Source of the DNA: Perkinsus chesapeaki ATCC PRA-425
Taxonomy: Eukaryota > Protista > Perkinsozoa
Length of the DNA: 57,229 bases
Assembly: GCA_013115145.1 (NCBI GenBank)
Contig: JAAPAO010000180.1
Coordinates: 1 to 57,229, forward strand
Direction of reading: 5' to 3'
In this document: piece by piece, positions 9,186-44,254 of the stretch
Layout of the letters: the number at the start of each line of letters is the position of its first letter
Position numbering within the stretch: position 1 is the stretch's first letter
Made by a program: the position numbers and the translations under genes
Notes under the pieces: generated by a model
What the model was told of the DNA's origin: nothing
Databases searched by the model: none
The model's input: the letters and a program-made list of their open reading frames with translations, nothing else

Positions 9186-9602
9186 GTTGAGGAGATAGAT
9201 TGAACTATAAGTTCTACTGGTACATGTGAGCGAGGTTTTTGTATGCTTTATGATAAAGCGGGCGACATTCGGATCGAGTACGAGCTCGCTTTTAGGGGAG
9301 GATGAGCCACTTAAAAGAAGGTAGGTGGTGAAGTGTTATTTACTGATCGACACTTTATGCGGTTTGAAAGGCTACAATATTGCACTACTACTACCACCAC
9401 AGTAGAGTGATAACCTCATCTAGCGCTTTTTAAGTATACCAAATATCCACATTGGCTACATTTAATGTGTATATGCTGTGTAATGATTGTAATGATCGAG
9501 TTCTGAGGCAGGATAAGACTCCATATTTTCCACAGCTAGCTCATTGAGGTTAATTATGGCGTGATGTATGAATCGTTATTTATAATTGTATTTTTCAGAG
9601 CA

Positions 9603-12600
9603 ATGAGCCTATCAATAGTTGATGAAGACTTTGATGTCTATGATAGTAATCCTTATCATCATCCGCTCGGAAAGAGACGTAAGTGGCGGACTCGTCGTTG
9701 TATTAGCCCACCGCTTATTTCGGAACTATCCCAGCATTTTGGCGCAAGGTGATTTACTGTGTAGTGATGATCGTGATGATGATGCTATATAGATATATTC
9801 TCAATAGTAATTCCGATACACAATGGTCAGTGGTAGGTTAGAATAAGTTGAACATGCTAGCACTTCGCTATACAAATAAGCACCTGGTTGTACACTTACG
9901 ATGTTGTGTATAACACATATCTTAAACAGTTTGCTAATATATATGTTTTTGACGCATCAATAAGTTGTGGAGAAATAGCGTTGAGGAAGAATGCTGGTAC
10001 ATCTGTTAAGTATCTTAACGAAGGTACTTCCCAATTTATAACCTATTTTGCTGTAATAGATATCAACTTACCTACACGTTCCTTTTACAGTAGCATTAGT
10101 GGATCGTTTTTTTTGGTTAGACCCTGATAGACGTGTCCGCAGACTCTCCAGTGTATCGCTGTCGAGGCTCATGACTTGCCCAATATCACAAGTCTTTGTT
10201 GTTACTCAAGATGTAAGGTGACGGGCATAGGGATTGAACCGGGGACTGCGGACCTTACAATATGCGGACCTTAACGTCTAAGCTATTCCGCCTTTGCTAG
10301 GAATTGGGGCACGGAGCGACAGCGACGGTTCGAAAAGTCATTCATAAAAGAACAGGAGAAGAGTGAGTTCCATCACCAATTCTGCGGCGCGTGCCACTTG
10401 GCTTGGTAATCTCAGGTTTGCGCTGAAGTCTCTACCGAAAAGGGACCTCACGCCTTTGCAGAAAAAGATATTATTGAACGAAGTTGAAATATTCCTGTCA
10501 GTGGATCATCCAAATATTTGCCGATTAGCTTACGTATTCGAAGCCCCTAGCATGGTGACCTTACCGGGAATCGAACCAGGGACCTCTCAATTACCAGATT
10601 TCGTAGGTACATTTAGTAATGGAACTATGCAGAGGTCCAGACTTACATACAATGATCCATCAAAGGTCGATGGTTCGATCCTCGGTTGTAGCATTTTATC
10701 AATAGGTTCAATTCTGGGCGTCATTTTAATGAGTTAGAGGTAGCCGACATCATAGCACAAGTGCTGTATGCTATCAATTACCTTCATACGTCTAACATAG
10801 TAAGGTCGTGGGTTCGATCCCTGGTGAAGGTATTATTAGGTTCATCGGGACATCAAACCTAGCCACTTTATTTTCACTTGTGGATGTCCCGTTGTCACCG
10901 GTAAGTTGGCGTCAATGCATATTGGATAAAAAATGATTGATAGTGTCTCTACTGGGAATCGAACCTGCGGTATTTGTCAGATGCCGCTCATGTTTATGAG
11001 TGCCCCGATCGTCGACTTAAACTATTTGACTTTGGCCTGGCCCGTCGAATTGGTTCCAGCAAATTTATTGGAGTAATGTCTTGACCAGGATTCGAACCTG
11101 AGTGTTTGGATTCCAAATCTTCAGGGCGGAACCTTGTCGTATATGGCACCTGAATGTTTGGAGGTTGAATGGGAGTCACGTAAACCTATACAAAGAAGAG
11201 TTAGTGTTTTTGGAGATGATGATCTGGATGAACAGTTAAGGAGTGGAAAAGATTCAGAGTAGGTTGGCCGCAGGCTGATGGGTATATTGACTTCAATGCT
11301 GAATTGAGAAGTTGATACTAAACTCAACATTTAATTTGATAACTCCTGCTTGAACGAAGGCATCCATAAACGACTTTAACGTGCTGCTGCATTCGGAAAC
11401 GAAGTAGCAATATTTATGTCATTGGATCTGTGTGGCTTCTTCCTCTTGCTCAGGTGTCTCATAATGCTGCCATTGTATGAGTTCTAAGACTCGGATTTCG
11501 TTATAACTATTCATCTTCGAGGTCCCCTCGAATGGGCTGTATGAGGCTGCTGTTTCCGCTTTAGTTACGAAAATAACATATTTCCGTAAATAAGGGTCAA
11601 ACATGTTTTTCACCACTGCGTGGTGCGATTTTACTGACTTAAAATAATTAAAATCGCACCACGCAGTTCTGAACCTTGGTCTTTAACTAATTCAGTGGAT
11701 GTGATAGTTGAATTTTTTGATGTCTTTGACAATACTGTTCGTATCTCTTTCATCTCGGGAACAGTTTTTTGTATCAGAGCTCCAACGGCAACTGAGTTGG
11801 ATGAAAAAGCAGCAAAATGCGACATATGGGGTGTTGGTGTTATTTGTTATCTCTTATTGACGGGCAAGATGCCATTTGAGTCGCCAAACGTCGGGGATGT
11901 TCTCAGAGAAATGAGGAAGATCGATCGAGGGAGAAGCCGTGCTAAGTCAGCAATATCGATCACGTGATCGATTTGGATATTGTCACAGCAGGTTTCTGAG
12001 CGATGATCGAGTTACTCATATATCAGAGCTCGCTCAGTCATTTCTGGGAGGTTGTCTGCAAGTCCGACCCTCCGAACGCTTCACCGCTCGACAAGCACTT
12101 GATCATCCATGGCTGACAGACATGCTTAAATCAGGTGAAAGAGAGGCAGCACAAAATGCAGGTTAGTGTATTCTATTGGCTAATCCTTTCTCTGTTGAAT
12201 TTATTTGAAGCTTATGAGGTAACAAGTATCGTCACGTATTCTCTTCGATAGCGACCAATTTTATAAGTATTAATAGAACGGCCTTCAGCTTTACAAGATA
12301 TAACTCTCCAGTGAACAGTTTTATATATAAATATTAAACGGATCCTTTAACGAGTATAGTTTAGCGAGTGGTTCGATAAACATAACCAAGAATACGGACA
12401 TAGTTCCAATACGGACTCATATCAATAAGTTGAAACTTATTGTTAGACTATACCTCAAAAGGTTACCGTCTTCAGTTTCGGAAGTTTTGCCGTGGAATGT
12501 GATTGAGAGTATGAGAAGGTATGCTGTAGCGAGTTCATTGAGGAAGGCCGCCTTAAACATGGTGGCATCGGGGCTTACATCGAGAGAAGTGCGTAATCGA

Positions 12601-13518
12601 AAGGTCTCCGGTTCGAATACCCCTAGCGACTTCCCCCACAGGTGCACGATCTCGAGAAGGCCTTCGTTAAGATAGATATAGACCACGATGGAGTAGTGCA
12701 GTTCTCTGAGTTACTCAGGGTTATCGCTCCAGCACATCGAGGAGACCTCCAGTCGGTCTTTCGTACATTCGCCAAAAGTCACAACAACTCAGGCGGGGGA
12801 GAGGTTCCAACCGAAGGGTCGCAGGTTCAATTCCAAGATGCGTTGTTTTAGGTACCAGAAAATGATCATGATTTTGAAGTTGAATATTCGCAGTTCTTGG
12901 CCGCTGCGGTTCACATGCGATCTGAAATGTTTCGAGATAAGATGAGAGAAATCTTTGGACGATTTGACATCGATGGAAATGGCACAATTTCCGAGGATGA
13001 ATTAAAGTAGGTGTCGCGCGCCACGAAATTATGAGATCATTGGCATTTTAGGATGATTCTCTCACACAGTCCGTCTACAAATAATGATGACCTCGACGCT
13101 GAAGTGGCCGAACTTTTAGCAAAGTTCGACAAGGATGGAAATGGTGTGATAGATTATGAGGAGTTCCTCACAGCTATGGATGACGATGAGGGAAGTCGAG
13201 ACAAGACCTGGATATGGGCACAACGCCACGAAATTCACTCTGTACGTTTACTCCTTTCCGCCTATTTTAGTTGTTGTTTAGGCACCACTGTTAGACAAGC
13301 ATAGCCCTTATGTTGGAACATTCGCCCATGCACCAGGTGGATCACCGTTATCGAGAGGATCATTATCCACTCTACCGAGGGACCTGGCATCATCATCACC
13401 ACGAATGAGTGCATACCACCAGAGCCCAGTGACCAGTGTTGTACGGGCAGTTCACCCACTTCCAAAGCCCATGCGATCTGCTGCGGTTTGTTGTGACCGA
13501 GGGTGTAACGTCATGTGA
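9603..13518 (+). CDS. CDPK: calcium-dependent protein kinase (kinase + EF-hands), many short introns
   Basis: ELGHGATATVRK, FALKSL, NEVEIFLSVDHPNI, VHRDIKP, DFGLA, GTLSYMAPE, CDIWGVGVI, RFTARQALDHPW, EF loops DIDHDGVVQFSE, DIDGNGTISEDE, DKDGNGVIDYEEF; start and last exon less certain. Confidence 0.92.
10219..10292 (-). pseudogene. degenerate full-length tRNA filling CDPK intron 10213-10300
   Basis: rc GGCGGAATAGCTTAGACGTTAAGGTCCGCATATTGTAAGGTCCGCAGTCCCCGGTTCAATCCCTATGCCCGTCA; TAGCT A-box start and GGTTCAATCC B-box, stems broken. Confidence 0.65.
10556..10590 (-). repeat. tRNA 3'-half-like element, antisense in CDPK intron 10555-10606
   Basis: rc AGAGGTCCCTGGTTCGATTCCCGGTAAGGTCA. Confidence 0.8.
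10665..10693 (+). repeat. tRNA 3'-half-like element forming most of 40-nt CDPK intron 10666-10705
   Basis: AG|GTCGATGGTTCGATCCTCGGTTGTAGCA TTTT..AG. Confidence 0.8.
10803..10832 (+). repeat. tRNA 3'-half-like element in 40-nt CDPK intron 10800-10839
   Basis: AGGTCGTGGGTTCGATCCCTGGTGAAGGTA. Confidence 0.8.
10944..10970 (-). repeat. tRNA 3'-half-like element, antisense in CDPK intron 10901-10980
   Basis: rc CCGCAGGTTCGATTCCCAGTAGAGACA. Confidence 0.7.
11077..11122 (-). repeat. tRNA 3'-half-like element, antisense in CDPK intron 11073-11124
   Basis: rc GATTTGGAATCCAAACACTCAGGTTCGAATCCTGGTCAAGACA. Confidence 0.7.
12591..12630 (+). repeat. tRNA 3'-half-like element in CDPK intron 12589-12641
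   Basis: CGTAATCGAAAGGTCTCCGGTTCGAATACCCCTAGCGAC. Confidence 0.7.
12805..12842 (+). repeat. tRNA 3'-half-like element in CDPK intron 12804-12851
   Basis: TTCCAACCGAAGGGTCGCAGGTTCAATTCCAAGATGCG. Confidence 0.7.
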
Positions 13519-18425: not shown

Positions 18426-19529
18426 CTATGCCGTATACTCCTGCACCTGCATTACTCCAGCCGGTAGGTCAAAGCCGGTCGCATAGGTTGTGAAGAAAGG
18501 TCTTCCTAATATAATTCCTGCAGCGGGCGAAGGGTAGAGCCAGAGTGTACACCAAGATTCATCACACGGAGTGGCATATTTCTTCAGGGGTATGCGGATA
18601 GTGAACGGTGCTCCCCCTGAGGTGCCAACAGTAAAAGTTAGAGTCGGTAGGTGATCAAAACCCTTCTTTTGAACGTACCAGACCACACCGGAAGTCTTGA
18701 CGTGTATGTCTTGTCCAGAATCTTTACTTGCTAACTCCACCATCTTGTTGAGGACAATTTCGAATATACTTCGCGGTAGAACGATTGGGTGTGCTCCAGT
18801 ATCATACACAATAGTTACTTGAGTCACCGGTTGACTGAATGTGGCACCTTTCGAGCTCACCATCCCAAAGGTGGCCAGGGATGAATCTAGTTTCGCCGTC
18901 ACAGACGGTCCCCTCAATTGTATTTCGGTTACCGGCTGTCTAGCTGGGCATGCTCCTTGAGAAACTCCTAGTATTAGATTCCCCTTGAATTCATGTGGCT
19001 GGCCAGGAGAGCATATGCGAAAAGCCCATTCATCGATGACACCATTTATATAGAGTTGACGGTGTATCGGATAACGGCCTTGTTGAGAACCATAGTCAAG
19101 CCCCATGATATTAAATGGTGGCTCATTAGGATAAGCTTGTCTAGGACTATAACCGATAATTAAGCCGAATTCGACAGTTCCCACAGATTCCCCATTCAAC
19201 ACCAGATTCCCTTTCTGAAGGGAATATTCATACATCATACCGCTAGCGAATGCCACTGTATACTTCTCCTTCTTGTAAGGATTGCATTTAGTTGGACAAG
19301 TATAACAGCCGGAAGGGAGACTCTTGCATGCACCTTTTCCATACTTCTTCTCATACCAATCGCTGTAGACAACGTAGGTAAACCCATCGCCACTGTCCAT
19401 CGTAAACTTTAAGGGATTCTCGTCTATGGCCGTCGAGCTGATCACTCCATCCACGAAGGGAAGGTTAATGTTGCCGTGGACAAGCAAAGCCGTAGTCGTT
19501 ACAATGTGATAAACTTGAAGTAAGCTCAT
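18426..19529 (-). CDS. secreted pepsin-like (A1) aspartic protease, intronless
   Basis: 367-aa single ORF, hydrophobic N-terminus, FTMDSGDG and IVYDTGAH catalytic motifs, IILGRPFFTTYATGFD C-terminal signature. Confidence 0.85.
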   Translation of the reverse strand: MSLLQVYHIVTTTALLVHGNINLPFVDGVISSTAIDENPLKFTMDSGDGFTYVVYSDWYEKKYGKGACKSLPSGCYTCPTKCNPYKKEKYTVAFASGMMYEYSLQKGNLVLNGESVGTVEFGLIIGYSPRQAYPNEPPFNIMGLDYGSQQGRYPIHRQLYINGVIDEWAFRICSPGQPHEFKGNLILGVSQGACPARQPVTEIQLRGPSVTAKLDSSLATFGMVSSKGATFSQPVTQVTIVYDTGAHPIVLPRSIFEIVLNKMVELASKDSGQDIHVKTSGVVWYVQKKGFDHLPTLTFTVGTSGGAPFTIRIPLKKYATPCDESWCTLWLYPSPAAGIILGRPFFTTYATGFDLPAGVMQVQEYTA

Positions 19530-42384: not shown

Positions 42385-44254
42385 TTAACCCACAACCACA
42401 CCCACTGATCGGAAAAACAGCGGCAAGCAAATGCATATTATGAAGCATACAAGAAGCGAGTTCAATAGAGCAAAATCAGGGTATTGGTAATCGAGACGAC
42501 TTAACCCACCTGGTCGGAAACCTCCTGGCAAGAAGCTTGAGTTGAGCGTTGAAACTTGGAAGTAGTCACCACGTGTAAGGAAGAGCGTAGTTAACCATAG
42601 AAAGACACTCAACTTGACCAGAAAGTCACCAATCAACATAACCTAAAGAATCGACTCATCGAGCAACGGAATAATATGTAAAAAAGCGTCAGCCTGGGAT
42701 TCGAACTCGAGCCCTACACTAGAGACTTAGAGTATAATAACGGCAGCCCGATGCCATCCTTATTACCTTATACCGATAATGTGGAGACCAAAGGTTGGTC
42801 ATTACGACCAGTATGGGGTAGGAGAGGAAGTAAAGGATTCCAACAGCGCAGAACTTGTTGAGAAAATACTTCAATTTAGGACCTACAATGTGCAACTGAG
42901 CATAATGCAACAACGATACACCTCCGGTGGGGCTCGAACCCTCGACCATGGCGCTCTACCGAACTGAGCTACGCAGGCTTATATACCACCAAACGGAAAC
43001 TCCCATTACTACTAGCCTGTTTTCCTGTATTGTTGATGGCCCAGAGAAACCATGCCAGAAGACACAATCTCATAGCGCATAACAAATACCCCGTTAAACC
43101 TGAACACGACCAAATGAAAAGACATCGATACAAATAGAAAGTAGACGACACAAGAAGGACAAAGCGCCGTTTGTGACCGTCACCTGCAGACTAATGAAAT
43201 TGCAGCATCGATAGATGGAGTTAACCGTGAATTTATTACCTTCATTTTCATAGAACTTATAAGATGCATCATCCTTTATTTTACCAAATCCAACAATTAA
43301 TATATGTATTATCTAAACAACCAAGTTATATACAAGCAATTGCGAACTTTCATGTGAGTGTAATCCTCCAACGCTAATAAGAAGCATCGGTGATATTTCA
43401 AGTAGGTCGGGATGAACTCGCATACGGAGTTCGGCATCGCCAATATTACCGCAACCATAAACACTATTGGAATAACAATATCCAAGTCGCCCAAATCTCT
43501 CTGTAACAGTGTGTAGCCCGACGCGATTAGAATGAGCAGTGAAGTAACTGCAGAACAGCTCAGTCAGTATGTATTCGTACTTCTTATATTAACAACCCAG
43601 GTTCGATTCCTCCCTCCTCTATATTACCCACAACTTCATCCACTACACTTAACATCTGCGATATCACATCCAAAGCCTTCAAACCATACCCATTCGACGC
43701 ATACTTCCAAATATGAAGAACTTCAAATAGAATTACCAACGCCTGAAGCACTCATGAAAGAGAAATACCGTTCCTTAAATTATTCAGAGTATTAGCCGAT
43801 CGCCACATCCTTGTTGAACGTGCAAGGGAAACCAACGATAAGGAGATGTTATCGAACGAGCAGCACTGCTATTTGTAGTGCAGCCCGAGACAGTAATTAA
43901 GTCAGGTGTAATATTCTCCAATTACCTGTATAGCAATTATACATGCTAAAGTTATCACGACAGGGTGAAGAGATTCCGCTGACTTAACGAATCTTACACA
44001 AGCCTTACAGAAGTAGTACATAAATGCCCCTGATAAAATATATGCCCAGCTAGAGGTATCAGAAATAACTACTTACCATATATAATAACTTCGAGTAGGA
44101 AAATCCACTGCACCCCACTCCGTTCCACCGAAAATTCACTGCCATCTGGCTGGTGCGCCACAAACTCGAACCTGATTGACTTTCTGTTAAAAACCCCTAC
44201 GTAGGTCTCACCTAAGCCTCGCCGGTGAATTACCAAACTTTGGCGGATTGTCAC
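42385..44254 (-). CDS. GPR180/TMEM145-like multi-pass membrane protein
   Basis: Several TM exons (GDLDIVIPIVFMVAVIL, RLCLLAWFLWAINNT, LKYFLNKFCAVGILYFLSYPILVV, FLWLTTLFLTRGDYFQVSTLNSSFLPGG); boundaries approximate. Confidence 0.65.
42686..42714 (-). repeat. tRNA 3'-half-like element in intron
   Basis: rc GGGCTCGAGTTCGAATCCCAGGCTGACGC + TTTTTT. Confidence 0.7.
42919..42978 (-). pseudogene. 60-nt tRNA-like element lacking the anticodon arm, intronic
   Basis: rc GCCTGCGTAGCTCAGTTCGGTAGAGCGCCATGGTCGAGGGTTCGAGCCCCACCGGAGGTG. Confidence 0.8.
43596..43621 (+). repeat. tRNA T-arm/B-box element, antisense in intron
   Basis: CCCAGGTTCGATTCCTCCCTCCTCTA. Confidence 0.6.

What the first reader, a model, noticed from the sequence alone, without database searches (positions are those of the whole stretch)
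10555..11124. Five consecutive CDPK introns are tRNA fragments, with tRNA sequence supplying splice signals
Seen: introns 10555-10606, 10666-10705, 10800-10839, 10901-10980 and 11073-11124 each contain a tRNA 3'-half. Their boundaries are fixed by kinase frame continuity (PSM|VHLVMEL, HQR|FNSG, NI|VHRDIKP, FIG|GGTLSYMAPE). In 10666-10705 the donor AG|GTC is the tRNA variable-loop AGGTC itself and the TTTT terminator feeds the acceptor tract. In antisense copies the donor GT overlaps or abuts the reverse complement of the tRNA 3' end (GTGACC, GTAATGTC). Inference: a tRNA 3'-half is a pre-built minimal spliceosomal intron, an introner-like mechanism without a transposon consensus.
Basis: partly seen in the sequence, partly recalled or inferred. 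Interest (0 to 1): 0.8.

Follow-up and report, generated by a model that had tools for sequence, protein, structure and literature searches.

The report
tRNA-gene relics forming Perkinsus kinase introns
In a calcium-dependent protein kinase gene of the shellfish parasite Perkinsus chesapeaki, eight of about thirteen tiny introns are worn-down tail ends of tRNA genes at positions that no related kinase gene examined uses; their tRNA promoter motif has survived since before the split from P. marinus, which points to an undescribed source of introns and a retained use.

Summary
All five stretches are GT..AG introns that restore a kinase frame, and each carries a tRNA T-arm/B-box motif with further tRNA features. 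The same gene holds three more such introns (10213-10300, 12589-12641, 12804-12851).

The genome is Perkinsus chesapeaki. This scan has already reported the same phenomenon many times on other DNA of this genome.

New here:
- The P. marinus ortholog has introns 1-4 at identical positions. The B-box is 82% identical between the species, while four-fold sites are saturated at 22%. The introns are therefore old and constrained, not recent gains.
- Paralogs in the same genome and a Vitrella homolog share older intron positions (MEAC|, HR|DLK) that this gene lacks. One paralog has no introns. The relic introns sit at new positions, which favours intron gain over later insertion into old introns.
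- The relics resemble different tRNAs (Thr, Gln, Arg-like). Their 3' end is fixed (A73 plus T-run) and their 5' end varies. They lie in both orientations.
- The variable-loop GT is the donor in only one of four sense introns.

Best reading: captured, 5'-truncated tRNA-gene copies became introns, and the B-box is now kept as a DNA site, most plausibly for TFIIIC. No RNA data could be laid, and I found no paper describing this.

The parts
10099..13241 (+). Calcium-dependent protein kinase gene (kinase domain followed by EF hands). The true start lies further upstream and was not determined.
   Evidence: Exon-by-exon Pfam hits are colinear on Pkinase, then EF-hand families. Frame continuity shown.
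10213..10300 (+). Intron IA (88 nt). It holds a nearly whole decayed tRNA-Thr(TGT)-like gene in antisense, with B-box GGTTCAATCCC (one mismatch).
   Evidence: Joins VVTQD|ELGHG. 45/60 identical to tRNA-Thr over positions 1-62. Same position in P. marinus, but the B-box has decayed there.
10363..10415 (+). Intron IB (53 nt). No B-box. Carries the second motif CGCGCCGCAGAA on the minus strand.
   Evidence: Joins TGE(E)|FALK. The P. marinus counterpart is 172 nt and cannot be aligned. Motif found.
10555..10606 (+). Intron 1 (52 nt). Antisense tRNA relic covering positions ~31-74. The donor GTGACC overlaps A73.
   Evidence: The P. marinus ortholog is 47 nt at the same position; its B-box is 7/11 identical and the core GTTCGA is kept.
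10666..10705 (+). Intron 2 (40 nt). Sense relic from tRNA position 46 to the T-run. The donor GT is G46-T47 of AGGTC.
   Evidence: P. marinus has the same donor AG|GTC; its B-box is 8/11 identical and the T-run is kept.
10800..10839 (+). Intron 3 (40 nt). Sense relic. The donor lies 4 nt upstream of AGGTC, and A73 lies 7 nt before the acceptor.
   Evidence: In P. marinus the B-box is 11/11 identical and AGGTC 5/5, with intron lengths 51 vs 40 nt. It lies 3 codons upstream of the old HR|D intron of paralogs and Vitrella.
10901..10980 (+). Intron 4 (80 nt). Antisense relic: T arm, acceptor strand, A73, trailer and a T6 run. The donor lies 25 nt beyond the T-run.
   Evidence: In P. marinus the B-box is 10/11 identical; that contig ends inside the intron.
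11073..11124 (+). Intron 5 (52 nt). Antisense relic of a tRNA-Gln(TTG)-like gene, positions 30-73, with an intact T arm. The donor GTAA is the reverse complement of the 4 nt after A73.
   Evidence: No ortholog sequence was available.
12589..12641 (+). Intron (53 nt). Sense relic, Arg(TCT)-like, from the anticodon loop onward. B-box GGTTCGAATAC.
   Evidence: Joins TSRE|VHDLEKAF. 25/33 identical to tRNA positions 37-70.
12804..12851 (+). Intron (48 nt). Sense relic from the anticodon loop to TTTT, immediately followed by AG. B-box GGTTCAATTCC.
   Evidence: Joins GGGE|VPEND. 23/30 identical to tRNA positions 34-63.
13007..13051 (+). Intron (45 nt) without a B-box. Carries CGCGCCACGAAA.
11164..11796 (+). 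Long intron (~520-630 nt; exact ends not determined), with a single-copy 65-nt hairpin at 11606-11676.
   Evidence: Several GT/AG pairs keep the frame open. Hairpin.

Best explanation
These are old spliceosomal introns, specific to the Perkinsus lineage, that arose when 5'-truncated copies of tRNA genes or of Pol III primary transcripts of several isotypes were captured in either orientation inside an intron-poor kinase gene.

Each copy runs from a variable internal point, often the anticodon loop, to the fixed gene end (A73, trailer, T-run). Each inserted piece became an intron because usable GT and AG lay at or next to its edges. In sense copies the T-run serves as the pyrimidine tract.

Since then the tRNA structure has decayed. 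The B-box, above all G53-A58, has been kept by purifying selection in both orientations. It therefore acts as a DNA site, most plausibly an orphan binding site for TFIIIC, like the extra-TFIIIC (ETC) sites of yeast.

Shown:
- The intron structure.
- The tRNA derivation.
- Sharing with P. marinus.
- The constraint on the B-box.
- Intron positions not used in the related genes examined.

Inferred:
- That insertion and intron birth were one event.
- The capture mechanism.
- TFIIIC binding.
For: Structure:
- GT..AG ends, a restored kinase frame and colinear Pfam hits.
- Intron lengths differ between species by non-multiples of three (52/47, 40/47, 40/51), while flanking exons are 84% identical in protein.

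tRNA derivation:
- B-box 19 vs 0.08 expected in the window, and 1821 vs 61 for the reversed control in the genome.
- In 54 sampled relics, A73 in 41/54, a T-run right after it in 29/54, and C48 in 83%, all in tRNA register.
- Matches to Thr, Gln and Arg-like tRNAs out to the anticodon loop or beyond.

Age and constraint:
- Introns 1-4 are at identical positions in P. marinus.
- B-box 36/44 identical against 12/55 at four-fold sites, Fisher p = 2e-9; core G53-A58 24/24.
- The outer T-stem pairs are near random in relics (1.37/3, against 3.0 in real tRNAs), so the motif is kept and the hairpin is not.

Gain:
- Paralogs L033/L035 and the Vitrella homolog share introns at MEAC|/CSG| and HR|DLK. 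This gene lacks those and has relic introns 3-11 codons away.
- Paralog L034 has no introns, and none of these loci has a B-box.

Orientation:
- 4 sense and 4 antisense in this gene.
- 15 sense and 21 antisense in the genome sample by a codon-usage strand call.
Against: - No RNA evidence for the junctions; none was listed.
- The comparison genes are paralogs or homologs, not orthologs, so loss of old introns and gain of new ones are inferred by parsimony.
- Only one other Perkinsus species, and only four of the eight relic introns, could be compared. In IA, and partly in I1, the B-box is not kept in P. marinus.
- AGGTC (44-48) and A73 are also conserved, which a plain B-box/TFIIIC site does not obviously explain.
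- A six-frame search for the TFIIIC B-block-binding domain PF04182 found nothing in the genome. This is inconclusive because exons are short.
- No target-site duplications or young copies were shown, so the capture mechanism is untested.
Confidence: 0.5

Rival explanations
1. Secondary insertion. The introns existed first. tRNA-gene fragments landed in them later, and deletion bias shrank each intron around the selected B-box until the relic filled it.
For: - Perkinsus introns are mostly tiny (PMC3101222), so shrinkage is plausible.
- I4 has 25 nt beyond the relic.
- Intron 12589-12641 lies only 2 codons from a Vitrella intron, and I3 only 3 codons from the old HR|D intron.
Against: - None of the relic positions coincides exactly with an intron in Vitrella, Amoebophrya or the three paralogs.
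- The two old positions shared by the paralogs and Vitrella are empty in this gene.
- In seven of the eight relic introns both edges lie within a few bases of the relic edges. I4 is the exception.
Confidence: 0.2
2. The conserved motif works at the RNA or splicing level, for example as a T-arm-like hairpin, a protein-binding site in the pre-mRNA or an intron-definition signal. It would then not be a TFIIIC DNA site.
For: - AGGTC and A73/T-run are conserved along with the B-box.
- In sense copies the T-run sits where a pyrimidine tract is needed.
Against: - The relics lie in both orientations (4:4 in this gene; 15:21 in the sample), and the B-box is conserved in both (I1 and I4 antisense, I2 and I3 sense).
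- T-stem pairing has been lost (1.37/3).
- The motif contains no branch-point-like yUnAy.
Confidence: 0.15
3. One reading: an introner-like process that is recent or still active and is creating new introns now.
For: - ~1,600 orphan B-boxes genome-wide, extrapolated from 54 of 61 sampled loci not being tRNA genes.
- Eight relics cluster in 3.3 kb of one gene.
Against: - Introns 1-4 predate the P. chesapeaki/P. marinus split, across which four-fold sites are saturated.
- The relics are heavily decayed and come from different isotypes.
- No near-identical copies were seen.
Confidence: 0.07
4. The motif is not tRNA-derived. It is a convergent regulatory 11-mer that happens to resemble a B-box.
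For: The Rfam tRNA model does not hit any of the introns at E<=10.
Against: - In-register C48, A73 and T-run, plus matches out to the anticodon loop.
- One nearly whole tRNA-Thr-like copy.
Confidence: 0.03

Closest known systems
Introner elements / transposon-derived introns (Micromonas, Aureococcus, fungi, Symbiodinium, Polarella, Amoebophrya; review PMC11282704, Farhat et al. PMC7789003)
   Same: Inserted repetitive DNA becomes a spliceosomal intron. The insert's edges or the target supply GT/AG. Many introns in a genome share one kind of source.
   Different: - No family consensus, no terminal repeats and no transposase link.
- The sources are ordinary tRNA genes of several isotypes.
- The copies are ancient and shared between species.
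- An internal motif is under selection.
Extra-TFIIIC (ETC) sites / chromosome-organising clamps of yeasts (orphan B-boxes bound by TFIIIC without Pol III; from my own knowledge, and mentioned in PMC5391098)
   Same: An isolated B-box without an A-box, conserved between species, with no tRNA product.
   Different: - Here the sites lie inside tiny introns of protein genes and are visibly derived from tRNA-gene tails with A73 and a terminator.
- They number in the order of a thousand.
- Occupancy by TFIIIC is untested.
tRNA-derived SINEs
   Same: tRNA-derived sequence dispersed in genes. 5' truncation is typical of retrocopies.
   Different: - No A-box head, body or tail.
- Only the 3' part of the tRNA gene plus its own terminator.
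- Many isotypes rather than one master copy.
Intron gain by capture of filler DNA at double-strand breaks (Daphnia model, Li et al. 2009; from my own knowledge)
   Same: Unrelated short DNA is inserted at a break and spliced out, with short repeats such as AGGT at both edges. Here: I2 AGGT, and 12804 AGGTNCCA with 7/8 matching.
   Different: The filler here is always one kind of sequence, a tRNA-gene tail. The repeats seen here do not exceed chance plus the splice consensus.
Dada DNA transposons that target tRNA genes in P. marinus (PMC3706591)
   Same: Same genus. [quoted passage not shown]
   Different: Dada elements insert into tRNA genes. They are 4.7-11 kb and have not been reported in introns of protein genes. 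No Dada sequence was seen next to the relics.

Membership tests
Spliceosomal (U2-type) intron | GT..AG ends and removal restores the reading frame of a conserved protein | tested here: met
   Between-species length differences are not multiples of 3.
Spliceosomal (U2-type) intron | Junctions seen in RNA | not testable with these tools
   No RNA run was listed, so read laying could not be used.
tRNA-gene relic (pseudo-tRNA fragment) | B-box/T loop with variable loop, acceptor 3' strand, discriminator and Pol III T-run at tRNA spacing | tested here: met
   A73 in 41/54, a T-run directly after it in 29/54, and alignments to Thr, Gln and Arg-like tRNAs.
Functional tRNA gene | Cloverleaf recognised by ARAGORN or the Rfam RF00005 model | tested here: not met
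   ARAGORN calls only 4 tRNAs in the window, none in this gene. No RF00005 hit at E<=10 in 9500-12500.
Introner / introner-like element | Many copies that share one element consensus | tested here: not met
   Acceptor strands and anticodon parts differ, and the best matches are to different isotypes.
Introner / introner-like element | Recent, lineage-specific insertions (absent from close relatives) | tested here: not met
   Introns 1-4 are shared with P. marinus at identical positions.
Introner / introner-like element | Intron positions new relative to homologous genes | tested here: met
   Absent from three paralogs, Vitrella and Amoebophrya. The old positions are empty in this gene.
ETC-like orphan TFIIIC site | B-box without an A-box or tRNA product | tested here: met
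   An A-box-like motif is present upstream of only 4/54 relics.
ETC-like orphan TFIIIC site | B-box conserved between species beyond the neutral level | tested here: met
   36/44 vs 12/55 identical, p = 2e-9; core 24/24.
ETC-like orphan TFIIIC site | Bound by TFIIIC, not by Pol III | not testable with these tools
   Needs ChIP. The six-frame search for PF04182 gave no hit, which is inconclusive.
tRNA-derived SINE | tRNA-related head with A and B boxes, plus body and tail | tested here: not met
   Only the 3' part and the gene's own terminator are present.
Calcium-dependent protein kinase | Ser/Thr kinase domain followed by EF hands | tested here: met
   Paralog L034 is identical to an NCBI P. 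chesapeaki hypothetical protein (FOL47_001064) that UniRef names a calcium-dependent protein kinase.

The most novel reading that the evidence does not exclude
Perkinsus carries on the order of a thousand or more orphan B-box relics. Many of them are whole introns born from captured tRNA-gene or pre-tRNA 3' fragments. They now serve as a genome-wide set of intragenic TFIIIC sites that cluster in particular genes. That would be both a new route of intron gain and a new use of introns.
Probability: 0.3. Interest if true: 0.85.

Novelty: new variant of a known kind. Interest (0 to 1): 0.75.

Why it matters
Where new spliceosomal introns come from is a long-standing question. The known large-scale source is transposon-like introners. 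Here ordinary tRNA-gene tails appear to have seeded introns at new positions in a gene that had lost its old ones. A Pol III promoter element inside them has then been kept for a very long time.

If TFIIIC binds these sites, Perkinsus would link intron content to Pol III-factor-based chromosome organisation. The idea can be tested directly in a culturable, transfectable parasite of oysters and clams.

On the practical side, gene models in Perkinsus go wrong at these tiny introns. The P. marinus GenBank model reads through intron 1 and drops an exon.

Tried and rejected
- **RNA support:** The look-up of sequencing runs listed no RNA run.
- **Relatives:** The genome search has no relatives for this genome.
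- Exons were searched one by one by reference, and joining was done only inside local scripts for translation and counting. As a result, full-length orthologs (P. olseni, the P. chesapeaki annotation, transcriptome proteins) could not be fetched.
- **Representative search:** exon 11993-12163 gave only distant kinases.
- **Synteny route:** the neighbouring 367-aa ORF found only itself.
- **Automatic intron caller:** a caller based on open frames across GT..AG pairs had no discriminating power. Random sites passed as often as motif sites, so it was dropped.
- **Strand call from ORF coverage:** too weak. It was replaced by a codon-usage score checked on the known exons. That score is still noisy, with 18 of 54 unclear, and T-run+AG patterns often disagree with it.
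- **TFIIIC domain:** PF04182 gave no hit in six frames.
- **Target-site duplications:** short repeats at the intron edges (AGGT at I2, GTGC at 12589, 7/8 at 12804) do not exceed what the splice consensus plus chance gives, and they are not kept in P. marinus.
- **Intron sliding:** I considered whether I3 is the old HR|D intron shifted by 9 nt. I rejected this as unlikely, because it would need both splice sites to move together.
- **Long-intron hairpin as a repeat:** it is single-copy in the genome.

Full report
**What is there**

Window 10099-13241 (+) encodes a calcium-dependent protein kinase. All five stretches begin with GT and end with AG.

Searched exon by exon, by reference, the pieces hit Pfam Pkinase in order (profile positions 27-70, 93-119, 134-152, 175-204, 227-263). 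EF-hand families follow.

The genome is Perkinsus chesapeaki. A paralog on contig C256 is 100% identical to the NCBI protein FOL47_001064 of that species.

No RNA run was listed for this stretch. The junctions therefore rest on frame, on profile colinearity and on comparison between species.

**The tRNA content is real**

- GGTTCGAWYCC occurs 19 times in the window against 0.08 expected from shuffles.
- It occurs 1821 times in the 41.7-Mb genome against 61 for the reversed pattern.
- Four of the five introns hold an exact copy. The fifth has one mismatch.
- Aligned to real tRNAs of this genome, the introns score 14-21 against 8-10 for motif-free introns of the same gene.
  - I1 covers tRNA positions 31-63.
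  - I5 covers positions 30-70 of tRNA-Gln(TTG), 32/41 identical.
  - I2, I3 and I4 cover the T arm.
  - 10213-10300 is a nearly whole tRNA-Thr-like copy in antisense (45/60 identical).
  - 12589-12641 and 12804-12851 are sense copies that start in the anticodon loop.
- Eight of about thirteen introns in this gene are relics, four sense and four antisense.
- Neither ARAGORN nor Rfam's tRNA model calls any of them.

**A wider sample**

I took 61 exact B-box loci: 40 unselected genome places plus the window. Only 7 lie in ARAGORN tRNAs.

The 54 others show the following, all in tRNA register:
- A at position 73 in 41/54 (binomial p = 1e-12).
- A T-run directly after position 73 in 29/54.
- C48 in 83%.
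- An A-box-like motif upstream in only 4.

The three outer T-stem pairs are near random (1.37 of 3, against 3.0 in real tRNAs). The relics are therefore tails of tRNA genes that include the Pol III terminator and lack CCA. They come from gene DNA or primary transcripts, not from mature tRNA.

**Age and constraint**

A word search with ORF 10363-10734 found one partial P. marinus kinase, P0055, on the 942-bp contig GG685013.1.

- That contig carries introns IA, IB and 1-4 at identical positions.
- Exons are 84% identical in protein (133/159).
- Four-fold degenerate sites are only 12/55 identical, which means they are saturated.
- Intron lengths differ by non-multiples of three (52/47, 40/47, 40/51). 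This again shows they are not coding.
- The B-box is 36/44 identical over introns 1-4 (Fisher p = 2e-9 against four-fold sites).
- The core G53-A58 is 24/24 identical.
- Four of the eight differences fall at positions 59-60, the variable NN of the B-box; the rest are at 52, 61 and 62.
- AGGTC (positions 44-48) is also kept in I1-I3.
- The B-box of IA has decayed in P. marinus, and that of I1 partly has.

These introns therefore predate the split of the two species, and their core is under purifying selection. 'Recent gain' is not supported.

**Are the positions old or new?**

- Paralog L034 is an intronless 615-aa CDPK.
- Paralogs L033 and L035 have introns after MEAC, between HR and DLK, and after APE.
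- A Vitrella brassicaformis homolog has introns after CSG (the same place as MEAC within an indel) and exactly between HR and DLK.
- An Amoebophrya homolog has none of the relic positions.
- This gene lacks both old positions. It has relic introns 7 codons upstream (I1), about 11 codons downstream (I2) and 3 codons upstream (I3) of them.
- None of the comparison loci contains a B-box.

The simplest reading is that the gene's ancestor had lost its old introns and later gained new ones made of tRNA tails. The caveat is that these are paralogs and homologs, not orthologs.

**Splice signals**

- In I2 the donor GT is G46-T47 of AGGTC at the exact tRNA spacing, in both species. The preceding AG is part of a conserved Arg codon.
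- In the other three sense introns the donor lies 4-14 nt upstream of AGGTC, at the 5' edge of the relic.
- In sense copies the acceptor follows A73 by 7-13 nt, after the T-run or a pyrimidine stretch.
- Within this gene the donor lies 0-6 nt beyond A73 in three of four antisense copies (I1, I5, IA); in I4 it lies 25 nt beyond the T-run. The antisense relic at window 50946, outside the gene, shows the same close spacing.

In both orientations one intron edge therefore sits at the fixed 3' end of the tRNA gene. The other edge sits at a variable internal point. This is what 5'-truncated copies would give.

**Orientation and level of function**

A codon-usage strand score, checked on the 14 known exons, relics sense, 21 antisense and 18 unclear. 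Within this gene the split is 4:4. The B-box is conserved in both orientations.

Taken with the loss of T-stem pairing, this favours a DNA-level site over an RNA structure. The obvious candidate is TFIIIC binding to an orphan B-box, as at yeast ETC sites. That is inference only. A six-frame search for the B-block-binding domain gave no hit, which is inconclusive.

**Literature**

Full-text searches and three papers read (PMC3101222, PMC7789003, PMC11282704) gave no description of tRNA-derived spliceosomal introns in Perkinsus or elsewhere.

**Earlier notes of this scan**

The same phenomenon has been reported many times on other pieces of this genome. I re-tested its main claims here.

**Verdict**

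The phenomenon appears undescribed in the searched literature and is of high interest.

Noticed in passing
window 8141, 8490, 10380(-), 13017, 22750(-), 37295, 41507, 49188(-), 52423 and others: A second recurring motif, CGCGCCRCRAAA, has 15 matches (up to 1 mismatch) against 0.45 expected. Several lie in short introns, including intron IB and intron 13007-13051 of the kinase gene. The IB copy is not conserved in P. marinus. Its meaning is unknown.
   Followed up: partly
window 11606-11676: A near-perfect 65-nt hairpin (about 25-bp stem) sits inside the long kinase intron. It gives weak sub-threshold microRNA-family hits only, and it is single-copy in the genome.
   Followed up: partly
window 42880-42960 (-): A tRNA-like sequence with acceptor, D arm and T arm that seems to lack the anticodon arm (a truncated tRNA gene). 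ARAGORN does not call it.
   Followed up: no
L031 (P. marinus GG685013.1) 521-673: The GenBank protein model P0055 reads through intron 1 and skips the exon encoding VHLVMELCRGPDLHEVIHQR. The model is wrong at these tiny relic introns.
   Followed up: yes
L034 (G000 contig C256): An intronless 615-aa CDPK paralog with an N-terminal MGCNGS acylation-type start. It has orthologs in P. olseni (80% identity) and P. marinus (77%).
   Followed up: partly
whole window: The density of exact B-boxes here (19 in 57 kb) is about 7-8 times the genome mean (1821 in 41.7 Mb). Eight relics cluster within 3.3 kb of one gene.
   Followed up: partly
window 12796-12859: AGGTTCCA at the 5' edge and AGGTACCA at the 3' edge of intron 12804-12851 form a 7/8 direct repeat. 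This could be a trace of a target duplication or it could be chance.
   Followed up: partly
window 18429-19529 (-): A 367-aa ORF with no Pfam family and no relative other than itself in the 5.8-billion-protein word search.
   Followed up: partly
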